Positions 154 through 7,738 of a DNA stretch of 7,888 nt are shown in pieces (position 1 is the first letter of the stretch; every line of letters begins with the position of its first letter). Position numbers and translations under genes: made by a program. Origin of the DNA: Octopus sinensis (Eukaryota); contig NW_021828652.1 in NCBI RefSeq assembly GCF_006345805.1, positions 1 to 7,888 of the forward strand, written 5' to 3'. The notes beneath the pieces are model-generated. The model had not been told where the DNA came from. It searched no databases and was given only the letters and a program-made list of their open reading frames with translations.

Positions 154-269
154 AGTTGTTTATAATTTTAACCTTTAAAGGTATTTTAATATGCTGCCAC
201 ATGTTTTGATGGAATTTTTTTCTGTAAAAAAACTTCATCCTATATTAGTATATACATATGTGTGTGTGA

Positions 270-410
270 CCTTCTATCAAATCTACTCACAAGGCTTTGA
301 TCGGTCGAGAGTAATATTAGAAGACGCTTGGCCAAGTCGCCATGCAACGGAAGCGAACCCGGAACTACATGGTAGGGAACCAAACTTCTTACCACGCAGC
401 CAGGCCTGCA
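270..410 (-). mobile_element. Degenerate head-only copy of the tRNA/CORE-like SINE (family 1)
   Basis: Aligns by eye with 1733-1898 and 4995-5153 (ctactcacaaggcttt...agaagacgcttggccaag...gaacccggaac...cttaccacgcagcc), with many substitutions. Confidence 0.85.
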
Positions 411-781: not shown

Positions 782-1356
782 CAGGGGTCCTCAACTATTT
801 TTAACCTACGGACCCCCTTTGATTACGATTTTGTATGTGTGGACCCCTTACATACTTGCTTGTATTTGTGACGGTATTCACCCATGGCGGGTTGAGCCGG
901 CTTCTTCTCTGGTCCTAGCGGCATCACGAACCATGGCGGCCCACGCTCAATGGTCCTGTGCGAGGTCACTGGAGATAGCGAGCCATTCGCGGTTCCATCT
1001 GCGCAGACCGACCACCTGCGGACCTGAGAGTTCGGAGATGTCCTCATTTATCGTCGTTGCCCAGGTTTTCAGCTGCTCGCTCTTGCGTTTGCGCCAGCTG
1101 GGAAGTGGAGGTGGGATGAGGGCATCGCGAATAGCTATTCAACATTTAAACAAATCCTATTGTATTTTTTTAATTAAATATTATCAAGAATTAGATCAAA
1201 GCCGTTATTTTGTGTATAGTGGACGTATAACGAATGGATTACACATAGATTTTACTGGTCTGGCGCACAGCCTTTTTCCTGGCCCCTGAAAAATTACCGT
1301 GGCCCCTCAATTTACTATATTGTATCCGTGGACTCCAAAAATATTATATGGACACC
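782..1356. mobile_element. hAT (Charlie/Buster-like) non-autonomous DNA transposon; right TIR lost; interrupted by an RTE fragment
   Basis: Starts CAGGGGTCCTCAAC, a typical hAT-Charlie terminus. It is preceded by ATCTAATT (774-781), with TA at positions 4-5 as in Charlie/Buster 8-bp targets. Subterminal GGACCCC/GGCCCC-like motifs at 810, 841, 1281, 1301, 1330 and 1350. No matching right TIR or second TSD is seen. Confidence 0.6.
853..1132 (-). mobile_element. 5'-truncated RTE-clade LINE: ORF C-terminus, short 3' UTR and CAAGTA-like tail
   Basis: Minus frame 1132->878 reads IRDALIPPPLPSWRKRKSEQLKTWATTINEDISELSGPQVVGLRRWNREWLAISSDLAQDH*AWAAMVRDAARTREEAGSTRHG*. This matches the RTE C-terminal pattern W-R/K..KTW..I.EDL....W...AQD...W. 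There is an in-frame TGA at 947-949 and a terminal TGA at 878-880, then tail ...CAAATACAAGCAAGTA. The segment is GC-rich against AT-rich flanks. The ORF track missed it because of the internal stop and the lack of a start codon. Confidence 0.85.
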
Positions 1357-1440
1357 AGCATTAATTGTCAAGCGATGATGAGGGGACAAACACCCTCAAT
1401 AAATAAACACGCACACTCACAGACGCACATGCACATATAT
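1353..1440 (-). mobile_element. Internal fragment of family-1 SINE (body next to the internal CA/TA tract)
   Basis: caccagcat..ttgtcaagcgatg..ggggacaaacac matches 1597-1635 and 4908-4950. Confidence 0.8.
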
Positions 1441-1670
1441 TCTTTCATTCTTATACTTGTTTCAGTAATTTGTCTGCGGCCATGCTGGAGCACCGCCTTT
1501 AGTCGAGCAAATCGACCCCAGGACTTATTCTTTGTAAACCCAGTACTTATTCTATCGGGATCTTTTGCCTAATCATTAAGTTATGGGGACGTAAACACCA
1601 GTACCGTTGTCAAGCGATATTGAGGGGACAAACACACACACAAACAAACATCACACAATACTATACATAC

Positions 1671-2678: not shown

Positions 2679-2738
<60 letters not shown>

Positions 2739-2750
2739 GTTATTGTTATT
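2679..2750. repeat. (TTA)n trinucleotide microsatellite
   Basis: About 20 perfect TTA units followed by TTG variants. Confidence 0.97.
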
Positions 2751-4433: not shown

Positions 4434-4732
4434 AAATAAATTCATGATATTAATCTCGAATTTTCGTAATTTTAAATAATCATTTCGAAAACTAATTTAA
4501 ATTGTTCGCTGTTTGTTTAATGGTCGTTATAGTTGTTCCTTTCACGTATTCGATCAAACAGATTTGGTCATAAATACAAAGTTCGGATTTCTTTATCAAG
4601 TTTTATGTTGGCCAGGTTAAAGGTTACCGTAAAAAAAACAAAGCAGAATCGGAAGCGAAACGAAATAACAACGAAAGCACTAAAAAAAATGAAACCATAG
4701 CAACATAATTCTTACAGACAACGCTGGTTATA

Positions 4733-5153
4733 TACTCTTTACTCTTTACTCTTTACTCTTTTGCTTGTTTCAGTCATTTGACTGCGGCCATGCTGGAGCA
4801 CCGCCTATAATCGAGCAACTCGATCCCGGGACTTATTCTTTGTAAGCCCAGTATTTATTCTATCGGTCTCTTTTTGCCGAACCGCTAGGTGACGGGGGAC
4901 ATAAACACACCAGCATCAGTTGTCAAGCAATGCTAGTGGGACAAACACAGACACACAAGCACACATACATACATATACATATATATACATATATACGACG
5001 GGCTTCTTTCAGTTTCCGCCTACCAAATCCACTCACAAGGCTTTGGTCGGCCCGAGGCTATAGTAGAAGACACTTGCCCAAGGTGCCACGCAGTGGGACT
5101 GAACCCGGAACCATGTGGTTGGTAAACAAGCTACTTACCACACAGCCACTCCT
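4733..5153 (-). mobile_element. Near full-length family-1 SINE with intact-looking Pol III boxes and (AAGAGTA)4 tail
   Basis: A box TGGCTGTGTGG (5138-5148), B box GGTTCAGTCCC (5095-5105), and (TACTCTT)x4 at 4733-4760. Internal CA/TA tract at ~4942-4995. Colinear with 1441-1898. Confidence 0.95.
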
Positions 5154-5390
5154 TTTTCCTTGTTTCAGTTATTTGACTGCGGCCATGCCGGAGCACGGCC
5201 ATGAAGGGTTTTTTTTTTTAGTCGAACAAATCGCTCCCAGAACTTATTCTTTGTAAGCCTAGTACTTATTCTATCAATCCCTTTTGCCGAACCGCTAATG
5301 TTACGTGGACGTAAACGTACCAACATCGGTTGTCAAGTGATGGCGGTGGGGAGGACAAGCACAGACACGCACACACGAATATATACATAT
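5154..5390 (-). mobile_element. 5'-truncated family-1 SINE (body only, ends in the internal microsatellite), head-to-tail with its neighbours
   Basis: ttgtttcagttatttgactgcggccatg...gttgtcaagtgatg...acagacacgcacac. Carries an extra gaagggt(t)n segment at ~5203-5219. Confidence 0.92.
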
Positions 5391-5572
5391 TTTTTTATTC
5401 TTTTACTGGTTTCAGTCATTTGACTACGGCCATGCTGGAGCACCACCTTTAGTCGAACGGATCGGCTCCAGGACTTATTCTTTGTAAGCCTAGTACTTAT
5501 TCTATCGATTTCTTTTGCCGAACCGCTAAGTTATGGGGACGTAAACTACCAACATCGGTTGTCAAGTGATGG
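5391..5572 (-). mobile_element. 5'-truncated family-1 SINE (body only)
   Basis: ggtttcagtcatttgactacggccatgctggagcacc...catcggttgtcaagtgatgg. Similarity ends abruptly at the 5576-5607 hairpin. Confidence 0.92.
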
Positions 5573-5575
5573 TCA

Positions 5576-5607
5576 CGTGACTATAAGACACATGTCTTAT
5601 AGTCGCG
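5576..5607. repeat. Near-perfect hairpin (12-bp perfect core, 15 bp with one G.T) overlapping a 10-bp palindrome
   Basis: GACTATAAGACA (5579-5590)-CA-TGTCTTATAGTC (5593-5604). The palindrome GTCACGTGAC lies at 5572-5581. Confidence 0.9.
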
Positions 5608-5899: not shown

Positions 5900-6453
5900 T
5901 CTTTCTCTCCCCTTCTCTCTCTCCTTCTCTCTACCCCTCCCCTTTCTCTCCCATTCTCTCCTCTATCTCCTCCACTCCCTCTCTCCCCTTCTGCCTCTCT
6001 CTCTCTATCTGCCCATATCTCTCTCTCTTCCCTTCCCTCTCTCTGCCCTTCTGTCTCTCTCTTTCTCTCTCTCCCCTTCTTTGTCTTTCTCTCTCTCTCC
6101 TTCTTTGTCTTTCTCTCTCTCTCCTTCTTTGTCTTTCTCTCTCTCTCTTTCTTTGTCTTTCTCTCTCTCCCCTTCTCTTTACCCCTCCCTCTTTTTCTTC
6201 CATTCTCTCTATGTCCCCTTCTCCCTCTCTCCCTCTATACCCTTCTCTCTGTCTGCCCTTCTTTCTCTCTCTTCCTCTCTCTCTCTCTTCCTCTCCTCTC
6301 TCTCTCTCTGCCCTTCTGTTTCTCTCCTTCTCTCTTTCCTTCTCTGTCTGTCTCTCTCTCTGTCCTCTCTCTGTCTCTCTCTTTCTCTCTCCTTCCCTGT
6401 CTGTCTGTCTCTCTCTCCCCCCTCTCTCTCTCCCTCTCTCTTTCTCTCTCTCT
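5900..6453. repeat. ~550-bp (CT)-rich polypyrimidine/polypurine tract with an embedded 24-bp minisatellite
   Basis: The plus strand is overwhelmingly C/T. The unit CTCTCTCTCTCCTTCTTTGTCTTT recurs, with GTCTTT at 6083, 6107, 6131 and 6155 (period 24). Confidence 0.97.
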
Positions 6454-7024
6454 AACCAATTTATTTCATATTAGCTAAGCACCATTTCAAACTGCTACCG
6501 ACATTTCATCAGAATTTATCGATTCATAATTTAATGTAACTTTAATATTATTTGTAGCAAATTCCTTCGCTTCCAACTTTATTCCCTTCTCTGTCTTTCT
6601 TTCATTTCGTTCAACCAGTTCTGCTATCGAAATCTCTGATTAGTTTCAAAGAACAAAGGCTGCTTTTATTTCTTTCGTGTTTCAACAATAAAACTTTACC
6701 CTCACATTTCTTTAGACCGCCATATCTCATTCTTCCCCCATGCGTCACCAACCCTCATTGCGATCTAAGGTCTTAATAAAATGTTCTCAGAACATTTCAT
6801 AAATTTCTCTGTCTTCAAAATTATCGTTTTGTAATAATTTTTTTTTTATATTTCCGTGCAGCAATTCCATTTACCATTCTGCTCCAAGGAATCAAACGCT
6901 TTTTGTTACTCTTTTATTACCAGATAATTCCTGAAAATTTCCAATCACCGTTGGCAGTGATTATTTATGGAGTTACGAAGATAAACGGGCGGAAAACAAC
7001 TTCATATATTATTTGCTTTAACAG

Positions 7025-7275: not shown

Positions 7276-7389
7276 ATATATATATGTATATATATATATA
7301 TATCCAACACCACCACCACCACCACCACCTCCTCCTCCTCACCTCCTCCTCCTCACCTCCTCTTCCACCTATATATATATATATATATA
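7276..7389. repeat. Compound microsatellite (TA)n-(CAC)n(CCT)n-(TA)n
   Basis: TA at 7276-7303, C-rich triplets at 7304-7369, TA at 7370-7389. Confidence 0.95.
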
Positions 7390-7562
7390 GGTAGAGTTTA
7401 CGAAAAAAACAAAAAGACGAAGACAGATGGTGTACAAAACAAACAAATGTATTAGTATAACACTCAGGAATAGAAAAAATCTTTTACGTTTCGAGCCTAG
7501 GCTCTTCTACAGAAAGGGACACAGAAAGAAACAAGGAGAGAAATAAGGAGAGAAAAAACAAG
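7390..7562 (-). mobile_element. Short (TA)n-embedded element carrying a hammerhead motif (Penelope-like/retrozyme-like, copy 2)
   Basis: TA runs on both sides (7370-7389 and 7563-7576). Hammerhead fold at 7481-7516. Same layout as 3218-3472. Confidence 0.7.
7481..7516 (-). ncRNA. Minimal type-I hammerhead ribozyme-like motif with A6U core variant
   Basis: Minus strand: CUUU-CUGUAGA-A-GAGCCUAGGCUC-GAAA-C-GU-A|AAAG. Stem I (CUUU/AAAG) is a perfect 4 bp, stem II is a perfect 12-nt palindrome and stem III is the palindrome ACGU. Predicted GUA cleavage lies between 7485 and 7484. Confidence 0.75.
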
Positions 7563-7577
7563 ATATATATATATATT

Positions 7578-7618
7578 TGTAGTTGGGAAGCCAGTTTCTT
7601 ACCACACAGCGACGCCCT
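7578..7618 (-). mobile_element. Short family-1 SINE head fragment (A-box region)
   Basis: tgtagttgggaagccagtttcttaccacacagc matches 1853-1887 and 5114-5146. Confidence 0.7.
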
Positions 7619-7685: not shown

Positions 7686-7738
7686 AATAATAATAATAAG
7701 AATAATAATAATAATAATAACAATAATAATAATAATAA
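7686..7738. repeat. (AAT)n microsatellite
   Basis: Direct reading. Confidence 0.97.

What the first reader, a model, noticed from the sequence alone, without database searches (positions are those of the whole stretch)
7390..7562. Minimal hammerhead ribozyme with a non-canonical CUGUAGA core in a ~170-bp (TA)n-embedded element
Seen: on the minus strand, 7516-7481 reads CUUU CUGUAGA A GAGCCUAGGCUC GAAAC GUA|AAAG. All three helices form, an extra A sits between A9 and stem II, and the only core deviation is A6->U. Stems II and III are both palindromes. Established: minimal type-I hammerheads with a loop-less palindromic stem III occur in Penelope-like element terminal repeats and in animal retrozymes, and are thought to cleave as dimers. 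A6 is normally near-invariant. Inference: this is a non-autonomous self-cleaving retroelement that targets (TA)n. If A6U is the family consensus rather than decay, it is an unusual natural core variant, and the palindromic stem II could add a second dimerisation interface.
Basis: partly seen in the sequence, partly recalled or inferred. Interest (0 to 1): 0.8.

Follow-up and report, generated by a model that had tools for sequence, protein, structure and literature searches.

The report
Crippled solo hammerhead ribozyme relic
This is a lone copy of the stripped-down hammerhead ribozyme carried by Penelope-like retrotransposons, sitting between two (TA)n runs in an octopod genome, with one core base changed in a way expected to cripple it; it is most likely an ordinary decayed transposon remnant.

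Summary
The minus strand 7516-7481 reads CUUU CUGUAGA A GAGCCUAGGCUC GAAAC GUA AAAG, flanked by (TA)10 and (AT)7. It is not chance: a minimal-hammerhead descriptor hits only this site in the window, against about 4e-5 expected per window.

The 4-bp helix I, the extra base between A9 and 10.1, the G10.1-C11.1 pair and the loop-less palindromic ACGU all match the published "min-HHR" of Penelope-like elements (PLEs; Cervera & de la Pena 2014). The extra A is therefore not a deviation; A6U is the only one.

Mutations in the CUGA turn abolish activity in comprehensive mutagenesis, and U6 also favours a misfold. The only octopod DNA I could fetch, 20 kb of Argonauta hians, holds three more hammerhead families: one with an intact core in (TA)n-flanked copies either side of a PLE gene remnant, and two with broken cores. 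Decayed hammerheads thus look common in octopods.

The upstream (AT)7 may simply be the tail of a truncated SINE. No octopus genome was reachable, so I could not test copy number or whether U6 is a family consensus.

Most likely this is a dead solo PLE-lineage hammerhead element. It is a new member of a known kind, of low interest.

The parts
7481..7516 (-). Minimal type-I hammerhead motif: CUUU / CUGUAGA / A / GAGCCUAGGCUC / GAAA / CG / U / A / AAAG. The predicted cleavage site lies 3' of A17, between 7485 and 7484.
   Evidence: Read directly. It is the only hit of the strict and relaxed descriptors in the window. Null rate about 2.5 per Gb-strand.
7506..7512 (-). Core box C3-A9, reading CUGUAGA. 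Position 6 (7509) is U where A is otherwise conserved.
   Evidence: U6 raises the probability of a competing UGU/ACG helix from <=0.1 to 0.5-0.7. Mutations in the CUGA turn give low activity (PMC9901934).
7505..7505 (-). Unpaired A between A9 and G10.1.
   Evidence: A nucleotide at this position is reported as a conserved trait of PLE min-HHRs (PMC4209133).
7493..7504 (-). Helix II: a 12-nt perfect palindrome, forming GAGC/GCUC plus a CUAG loop as a hairpin, with the G10.1-C11.1 closing pair.
   Evidence: The intermolecular duplex scores -23.8 kcal/mol against -4.2 for the hairpin.
7485..7492 (-). GAAA box plus the loop-less palindromic helix III strand ACGU and the cleavage-site base A17.
   Evidence: The ACGU self-duplex scores only -1.7 kcal/mol. 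Palindromic 15.2-16.2 is a min-HHR trait (PMC4209133).
7517..7562 (-). Pyrimidine-rich 5' part of the element (46 nt), including a 12-nt unit repeated 2.4 times.
   Evidence: It resembles only low-complexity TC-rich DNA elsewhere in the window. The Argonauta hammerhead element also starts with a pyrimidine-rich tract.
7390..7480 (-). 3' part of the element (91 nt), ending at (TA)n.
   Evidence: No similar sequence in the window, L001 or L002.
7370..7389 (.). (TA)10 flank on the 3' side of the element.
7563..7576 (.). (AT)7 flank on the 5' side of the element. It may be the tail of the adjacent truncated SINE.
7578..7616 (-). First ~39 nt (tRNA-like head) of the window's SINE family, followed directly by (AT)7. 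This is context, not part of the hammerhead element.
   Evidence: Repeat family D14. The alignment to four SINE copies shows the head, then a jump to the (TA)n tail.

Best explanation
The 173-bp stretch 7562-7390 (minus strand) is a solitary, non-coding remnant of a hammerhead-bearing retroelement of the Penelope-like element (PLE) lineage. It is either the 3'/pseudo-LTR end of a 5'-truncated PLE or a solo monomer of a PLE-derived non-autonomous element, and it lies in a (TA)n microsatellite of an octopod genome. In an active parent element, two copies of the minimal hammerhead pair through the palindromic ACGU to build helix III and cut the multimeric transcript after position 17. This copy carries A6U in the CUGA turn, has no partner copy nearby, and has only a 4-bp helix I, so it is most likely catalytically dead. 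What is shown: the motif, its non-random nature, its fit to the min-HHR architecture, and the abundance of hammerhead relics and a PLE in octopod DNA. What is inferred: the PLE origin of this particular copy, insertion into (TA)n, and loss of activity.
For: (1) The motif is exact at the stated coordinates and is the only descriptor hit in the window. About 4e-5 are expected per window.

[quoted passage not shown] The same paper reports that most copies are solitary and come from truncated PLEs (PMC4209133). The bulge and the G10.1-C11.1 pair were not required by my descriptor, and no random hit had both.

(3) The window is octopod DNA. A SINE-derived reading frame hits an Argonauta hians protein at 80% identity.

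(4) PLEs are one of the six transposon orders in Octopus vulgaris, with an old expansion and 30 recently active Penelope families (PMC13282606).

(5) The 20 kb of Argonauta DNA holds a 5'-truncated PLE. Its RT fragment is followed by a GIY-YIG domain (24.5 bits, above the Pfam cut-off), and its 5' junction abuts (TA)n.

(6) The same 20 kb holds three hammerhead families in six copies, where 0.1 relaxed hits are expected. Rfam Hammerhead_1 supports two of them. One family lies in ~335-bp copies; one copy is flanked by (TA)n on both sides and the other is followed by degenerate (TA)n, and they sit either side of the PLE remnant with the same layout as the window element. Two of the three families have mutated cores, one of them A6U plus U4C, so core decay appears common in this small sample.

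(7) In comprehensive mutagenesis, single mutations in the CUGA turn give low activity and are not rescued by a second mutation (PMC9901934). U6 also favours a competing fold.
Against: No second copy or relative of the 173-bp sequence was found, so family membership and PLE origin rest on motif architecture alone. There is no PLE coding remnant in the window. Helix II (4-5 bp) is shorter than the 6-8 bp described for most min-HHRs. Rfam Hammerhead_1 does not score it at all. The predicted fold is not unusually stable. The 5' half of the motif lies at the edge of a low-complexity pyrimidine tract. The upstream (AT)7 can be explained as a SINE tail. Apart from A6U, all other specified core positions and both stems fit the ideal motif. 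That is unexpected for an old decayed copy, so U6 could be inherited from a source element rather than private.
Confidence: 0.7

Rival explanations
1. The element belongs to an octopus family in which U6 is the consensus, and the ribozyme still cleaves, perhaps as a dimer or higher-order assembly that uses both the ACGU and the 12-nt helix II palindromes. That would make it a natural core variant of the hammerhead.
For: Apart from position 6, every core position and both stems are intact, which suggests a young copy or one under constraint. An unrelated Argonauta hammerhead in a 357-bp tandem also has U at position 6, alongside U4C. Natural core covariants such as U3-A8 exist in PLE min-HHRs (PMC4209133). 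The helix II palindrome is by far the strongest predicted intermolecular contact (-23.8 kcal/mol).
Against: In comprehensive single and double mutagenesis, all changes in the CUGA turn except the C3:G8 swap gave low activity, with no rescue (PMC9901934). U6 stabilises an inactive pairing with A15.1-C15.2-G16.2. Only one copy is known, and the Argonauta U6 copies are near-identical duplicates, so they count as a single event. Even canonical min-HHRs cleave poorly in vitro.
Confidence: 0.08
2. The motif is a chance near-match to the hammerhead, formed where a pyrimidine-rich low-complexity tract meets a short palindrome, and has no transposon or ribozyme ancestry. The (TA)n flanks are ordinary microsatellites or SINE tails.
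For: No relatives were found. The fold is not special. There is no Rfam hit even at E<=10. CUUUCUGU-like strings are common in the window's TC-rich DNA. A published review warns that minimal motifs with relaxed cores are mostly false positives (PMC6155905). A whole-genome scan would meet about 10-30 such chance hits. (TA)n tracts are dense in this window.
Against: The expected number per window is about 4e-5, and lower still once the bulge and G10.1-C11.1 are required. Real hammerhead relics occur at several per 20 kb in the octopod DNA sampled, far above the chance rate of about 2.6 per Mb-strand for the loose descriptor. The negative searches say nothing, because a SINE control pattern drawn from the window's own copies also found nothing in two of the three DNA collections.
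Confidence: 0.12
3. It is a solo monomer of a canonical non-LTR retrozyme, meaning a tandem-repeat circular-RNA element, rather than a PLE end.
For: The 173-bp size lies within the 150-450 bp monomer range, and solo monomers are described. A retrozyme-like 357-bp tandem with a hammerhead exists in Argonauta.
Against: There is no tandem copy. The ribozyme lacks the 6-bp helix I, the loop-loop contacts and the looped helix III of retrozyme hammerheads, and Hammerhead_1 does not score it. Retrozymes are in any case proposed to derive from PLE pseudo-LTRs, so this is a sub-case of the best explanation.
Confidence: 0.1

Closest known systems
Minimal hammerhead ribozymes (min-HHRs) of metazoan Penelope-like elements (Cervera & de la Pena 2014, PMC4209133)
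   Same: Type-I topology, a 4-bp helix I, an unpaired base between A9 and G10.1, a G10.1-C11.1 pair, no loop 3, and palindromic A-C-G-U that can form helix III only between two copies. It occurs as a solitary motif, as most reported copies do, and PLEs are known to prefer (TA)n targets.
   Different: U replaces the conserved A6. Helix II is 4-5 bp rather than 6-8 bp. The cleavage triplet is GUA rather than the commoner GUC. No PLE reading frame or second repeat lies nearby, and no family has been shown.
Non-LTR retrozymes of animals (Cervera & de la Pena 2020, PMC7229834; Li et al. 2026 preprint, 10.64898/2026.07.22.740005)
   Same: A short, non-coding, AT-rich unit of about 170 bp that carries a type-I hammerhead. 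Solo monomers exist, and a PLE-derived origin has been proposed for them.
   Different: It is not in tandem. The hammerhead is of the minimal rather than the canonical type, with no 6-bp helix I, no loop-loop contacts and no looped helix III.
Argonauta hians hammerhead element found here (L001 13899-14250 and 19138-19465)
   Same: An octopod element with the layout (TA)n | pyrimidine-rich 5' part | type-I hammerhead | ~60-90 nt | (TA)n.
   Different: There is no primary-sequence similarity. The Argonauta element is about 335 bp and its hammerhead has an exact CUGAAGA core, a 6-bp helix I, helix III ACGCGU and a weak A-U helix II. It scores 20.7 bits with Rfam Hammerhead_1, whereas the window motif scores nothing.
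CChMVd (+) hammerhead with an extra A between A9 and G10.1 (De la Pena & Flores 2001, cited in PMC4209133 and PMC6155905)
   Same: An extra nucleotide at the same junction is tolerated in a natural, active hammerhead.
   Different: It is a type III viroid ribozyme with a canonical core and tertiary contacts.

Membership tests
PLE minimal hammerhead (min-HHR) | Type-I three-way junction with a short open helix I (4-5 bp). | tested here: met
   CUUU/AAAG forms 4 bp. The pairing probability is only about 0.3.
PLE minimal hammerhead (min-HHR) | Conserved core boxes CUGANGA and GAAA. | tested here: not met
   GAAA is intact. The first box reads CUGUAGA, with A6 replaced by U at 7509.
PLE minimal hammerhead (min-HHR) | [quoted passage not shown] | tested here: met
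   A at 7505. The trait is listed in PMC4209133.
PLE minimal hammerhead (min-HHR) | A G10.1-C11.1 closing pair of helix II. | tested here: met
   G7504 pairs with C7493.
PLE minimal hammerhead (min-HHR) | No loop 3, with palindromic 15.2-16.2 so that helix III forms only between two copies. | tested here: met
   A-C-G-U at 7489-7486. The self-duplex scores -1.7 kcal/mol.
PLE minimal hammerhead (min-HHR) | A longer-than-usual helix II (6-8 bp). | tested here: not met
   5 bp with a 2-nt loop on paper; 4 bp plus a CUAG loop in the predicted fold.
PLE minimal hammerhead (min-HHR) | Lies in the terminal repeat of a PLE, or belongs to a genomic family of copies showing covariation. | not testable with these tools
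   No PLE coding remnant in the window and no other copy in 30 kb of octopod DNA. No octopus genome was reachable: the SINE control found nothing in the two collections tested, and the protein routes were empty.
PLE minimal hammerhead (min-HHR) | Self-cleavage, at a low rate and as dimers. | not testable with these tools
   Needs an in vitro transcription assay.
Animal non-LTR retrozyme | Head-to-tail tandem repeats of a 150-450 bp unit. | tested here: not met
   A single copy, with no direct repeat of the unit in the window.
Animal non-LTR retrozyme | Canonical type-I hammerhead: helix I 6 bp, helix II 4 bp, loop 1-loop 2 contacts, and helix III of 1-2 bp with a palindromic loop. | tested here: not met
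   Helix I is 4 bp and there is no loop 3. There is no Hammerhead_1 hit at E<=10, while two Argonauta hammerheads score about 20 bits under the same conditions.
Animal non-LTR retrozyme | Expressed as small circular RNAs. | not testable with these tools
   No transcriptome data available.
Rfam Hammerhead_1 (RF00163) | Score at or above the gathering threshold of 34 bits. | tested here: not met
   No match at E<=10, either on the whole window or on 7450-7550.

The most novel reading that the evidence does not exclude
U6 is the consensus of a (TA)n-targeting hammerhead element family in octopods, and the RNA still self-cleaves as a dimer or multimer held together by the helix II and helix III palindromes. 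This would be a natural hammerhead that tolerates loss of the near-invariant A6. The independent U6 in an Argonauta tandem-repeat hammerhead would then be a second instance.
Probability: 0.07. Interest if true: 0.6.

Novelty: new member of a known kind. Interest (0 to 1): 0.2.

Why it matters
If this is a decayed solo PLE hammerhead, as I conclude, it adds little beyond showing that octopod genomes, like other metazoan genomes, are littered with hammerhead relics tied to Penelope-like elements and (TA)n microsatellites. I found no paper describing hammerheads specifically in octopods. It would matter only if U6 proved to be a family consensus that retains activity. That would challenge the near-invariance of A6 in the hammerhead U-turn and give a natural test case for how minimal dimeric hammerheads assemble.

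Tried and rejected
1. Exact-pattern scans for the hammerhead (CTGNNGAAGAGCCTAGGCTCGAAAC) in metagenome, viral and prokaryote-genome collections found nothing. These results are uninformative, because a 24-nt pattern shared by three of the window's four SINE copies also found nothing in the metagenome and viral collections.

2. Protein-level fishing with a translation of the element found no candidates, and the 1.84-billion-protein library gave no hits. This too is uninformative: even a reading frame derived from the window's SINE retrieved only two proteins.

3. Exact look-up of six window ORFs to find the source contig returned nothing on record.

4. Searching with the Argonauta PLE endonuclease to fetch octopod PLE copies found no candidates.

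5. The supplements of the two key papers are not held, and a literature search for the sequence string found nothing.

6. I looked for a PLE coding remnant in the window by tblastn with the Argonauta RT and EN fragments and found none.

7. I tested for homology between the window element and the Argonauta hammerhead element and found none.

8. I looked for a second hammerhead downstream of the window's 540-bp TC-rich tract and found none.

9. I considered reading CUUUCUGUAG as a 3' splice acceptor of an exon. This has no support and cannot be tested here.

10. I considered treating the helix II palindrome as significant and rejected it. Any hairpin with a self-complementary loop is a palindrome, with about a 1/16 chance for a tetraloop.

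Full report
**Observation.** In hammerhead numbering:
- Helix I is 7516-7513 paired with 7484-7481.
- C3-A9 is 7512-7506, with U at position 6 (7509).
- An unpaired A sits at 7505.
- Helix II is the 12-nt perfect palindrome 7504-7493, closed by G10.1-C11.1.
- G12-A15.1 is 7492-7489. C15.2, G16.2, U16.1 and A17 are 7488-7485.

The stretch 7390-7562 lies between (TA)10 (7370-7389) and (AT)7 (7563-7576).

**Is it more than chance?** I wrote a descriptor for a minimal type-I hammerhead: helix I >=4 bp, CUGANGA with at most one mismatch, an optional one-base bulge, helix II >=4 bp with a 2-10 nt loop, GAAA, a complementary 15.2/16.2 pair, U, then H.
- It hits only this site on both strands of the window. 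A looser version (two core mismatches, 3-bp stems, palindromic helix III inserts) also hits only this site.
- Random sequence with the window's composition gave 1 hit in 200 Mb. First-order Markov sequence gave 3 hits in 1.2 Gb, none with both the bulge and G10.1-C11.1.
- That is about 2.5 hits per Gb of strand, or roughly 4e-5 expected in this window and 10-30 in a genome of about 2.7 Gb.

Thermodynamics adds nothing. The 48-nt and 173-nt folds are no better than shuffled sequence. Rfam finds no hammerhead, even at E<=10 on a 101-nt stretch.

**What the architecture matches.** Cervera & de la Pena (2014, PMC4209133) defined the "min-HHR" of metazoan Penelope-like elements (PLEs). [quoted passage not shown] Most genomic copies are solitary and are attributed to truncated PLEs, and in vitro activity is low and seen only in dimers or trimers.

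The window motif has every one of these features except two: a shorter helix II (4-5 bp) and the A6-to-U change. A6U is the only core difference.

**Organism and transposon background.** The window contains four copies of a SINE with a tRNA-gene-like 5' head and a (TA)n tail, all on the minus strand. ARAGORN called no tRNA gene in the window. A reading frame through one copy hits a hypothetical protein of the octopod Argonauta hians at 80% identity. Octopus genomes carry PLEs as one of six transposon orders, with an expansion at Jukes-Cantor distance 0.2 and 30 recently active Penelope families in O. vulgaris (PMC13282606). PLE clades are reported to prefer (TA)n targets (PMC8557442).

**Comparators from the only octopod DNA I could fetch.** The Argonauta locus L001 (20.3 kb) proved informative.
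- It holds a 5'-truncated PLE. RT fragments run 16290-17120, followed by a GIY-YIG endonuclease at 17337-17645 (Pfam 24.5 bits against a cut-off of 22.6). Its 5' junction abuts a (TA)n run.
- The relaxed descriptor finds six hammerhead-like sites in three families, where 0.1 are expected. None of 109 random hits in 42.6 Mb had a helix I of 6 bp or more, whereas all six L001 sites do.
- Family A reads CUCUAC CUGAAGA UUUUUAAUAAA GAAA CGCG U U GUAGAG, with an exact core. It sits in two ~335-bp copies that are 94-95% identical and 5.2 kb apart, either side of the PLE remnant. Each copy begins with a pyrimidine-rich tract. One copy is flanked by (TA)n on both sides; the other is preceded by TC-rich low-complexity DNA and followed by degenerate (TA)n. 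Rfam Hammerhead_1 scores it 20.7 bits.
- Family B reads GCAUGU CCGUUGA GUUC...GAAC GAAA CUAUAG U C AUAUGC. It lies in 357-bp tandem units plus an inverted arm, which is retrozyme-like. It has canonical helices, but U4C and A6U in the core, and scores 19.9 bits.
- Family C has an exact CUGAUGA box, an 8-bp helix I and helix III AUGCAU, but has lost G12.

In this small sample, hammerhead relics are frequent in octopod DNA, are associated with a PLE and with (TA)n, and often have broken cores. The layout of family A, namely (TA)n | pyrimidine-rich | hammerhead | about 60 nt | (TA)n, is the same as that of the window element, although the two share no sequence similarity.

**Function of this copy.** Comprehensive single and double mutagenesis of a hammerhead found that all changes in the CUGA turn other than the C3:G8 swap give low activity, with no rescuing second mutation (PMC9901934). 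Folding shows a further cost: U6 completes a UGU/ACG helix that sequesters U4-U6 and A15.1-G16.2. Its pair probabilities are 0.5-0.7, against 0.1 or less with A6.

Helix I forms with a probability of only about 0.3. There is no second copy in the window to supply helix III. The ACGU contact is worth only -1.7 kcal/mol, whereas the helix II palindrome would dominate any dimer at -23.8 kcal/mol. It is a thermodynamic prediction only, and a palindromic tetraloop hairpin is not statistically remarkable. I infer that this copy does not self-cleave.

**The flanks.** On the minus strand, the first 39 nt of the SINE (7616-7578) are followed directly by (AT)7 and then by the element. There are two readings. 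The (AT)7 may simply be the tail of an internally deleted SINE. Alternatively, the element may have inserted into that tail, splitting it into (AT)7 and (TA)10. I cannot tell which. (TA)n tracts are so dense here (11 in 7.9 kb) that flanking (TA)n alone is weak evidence of targeting.

**What could not be done.** The decisive test is whether 7390-7562 has relatives and what their position 6 is. That needs an octopus genome, and none of the DNA collections searched yielded octopod sequence: the hammerhead pattern found nothing in any of the three, and the window's own SINE pattern found nothing in the two where it was tried. The protein-based routes returned nothing or almost nothing, even for the SINE. 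The window's own ORFs are not on record. The negative searches therefore carry no weight either way.

**Verdict.** The best explanation (confidence about 0.7) is a solitary, decayed hammerhead element of the PLE lineage lying in (TA)n. The rivals are a chance motif (about 0.12) and an active U6 family (about 0.08). A solo canonical retrozyme monomer (about 0.1) overlaps the best explanation rather than competing with it. This is a new member of a known kind and of low interest, unless genome-wide data show that U6 is a conserved, active variant.

Noticed in passing
L001 14137-14176 and 19352-19391 (+), within copies 13899-14250 and 19138-19465: Argonauta hians has a ~335-bp hammerhead element. 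One copy is flanked by (TA)n on both sides, and the other is preceded by TC-rich DNA and followed by degenerate (TA)n. The hammerhead has an exact-core type-I motif (CUGAAGA, 6-bp helix I, helix III ACGCGU, weak A-U helix II). The two copies are 94-95% identical and sit either side of a PLE gene remnant. Rfam Hammerhead_1 scores it 20.7 bits, below the gathering threshold.
   Followed up: partly
L001 14740-15564 (357-bp tandem units, motif on the minus strand ending at 14978 and 15335) and inverted arm 15558-15744 (motif + 15565-15610): A retrozyme-like tandem repeat whose hammerhead has canonical helices (I 6 bp, II 4 bp, III 2 bp plus a palindromic tetraloop, GUC site). Its core reads CCGUUGA, that is U4C and A6U. 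This is the same position-6 change as in the window, but the copies are near-identical duplicates.
   Followed up: partly
L001 4709-4661 (-): A third hammerhead relic with an exact CUGAUGA box, an 8-bp helix I and helix III AUGCAU, but with G12 lost.
   Followed up: no
L001 16247-17645 (+): A 5'-truncated Penelope-like element: RT fragments followed by a GIY-YIG endonuclease (Pfam 24.5 bits). Its 5' junction abuts (TA)n. No hammerhead is detectable in its 3' region, which runs into four 189-bp tandem units with tRNA-like, SINE-like sequence (17866-18750).
   Followed up: partly
window 240-407, 1727-1892, 2116-2254, 4989-5153 (all on the minus strand); head fragment 7578-7616: A SINE family of about 165 bp with a tRNA-gene-like 5' head and a (TA)n tail; ARAGORN called no tRNA gene in the window. 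It accounts for at least four of the window's (TA)n tracts.
   Followed up: partly
window 1352-1635, 4720-4948, 5154-5358, 5362-5587: A second interspersed repeat family of about 230 bp (…GACTGCGGCCATGCTGGAGCACCGCC…) in four same-strand copies, two of them adjacent.
   Followed up: no
window 5900-6455: A 540-bp TC-rich low-complexity tract on the plus strand. A similar tract directly precedes the second Argonauta hammerhead element (L001 18850-19137), but no hammerhead follows it in the window.
   Followed up: partly
window 5579-5604: A 26-nt perfect palindrome, GACTATAAGACACATGTCTTATAGTC, at the end of a repeat copy.
   Followed up: no
window 2680-2750 and 7686-7738: (TTA)n and (AAT)n tracts forming a long-range inverted repeat about 4.9 kb apart. 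This is probably just microsatellites of opposite orientation.
   Followed up: no
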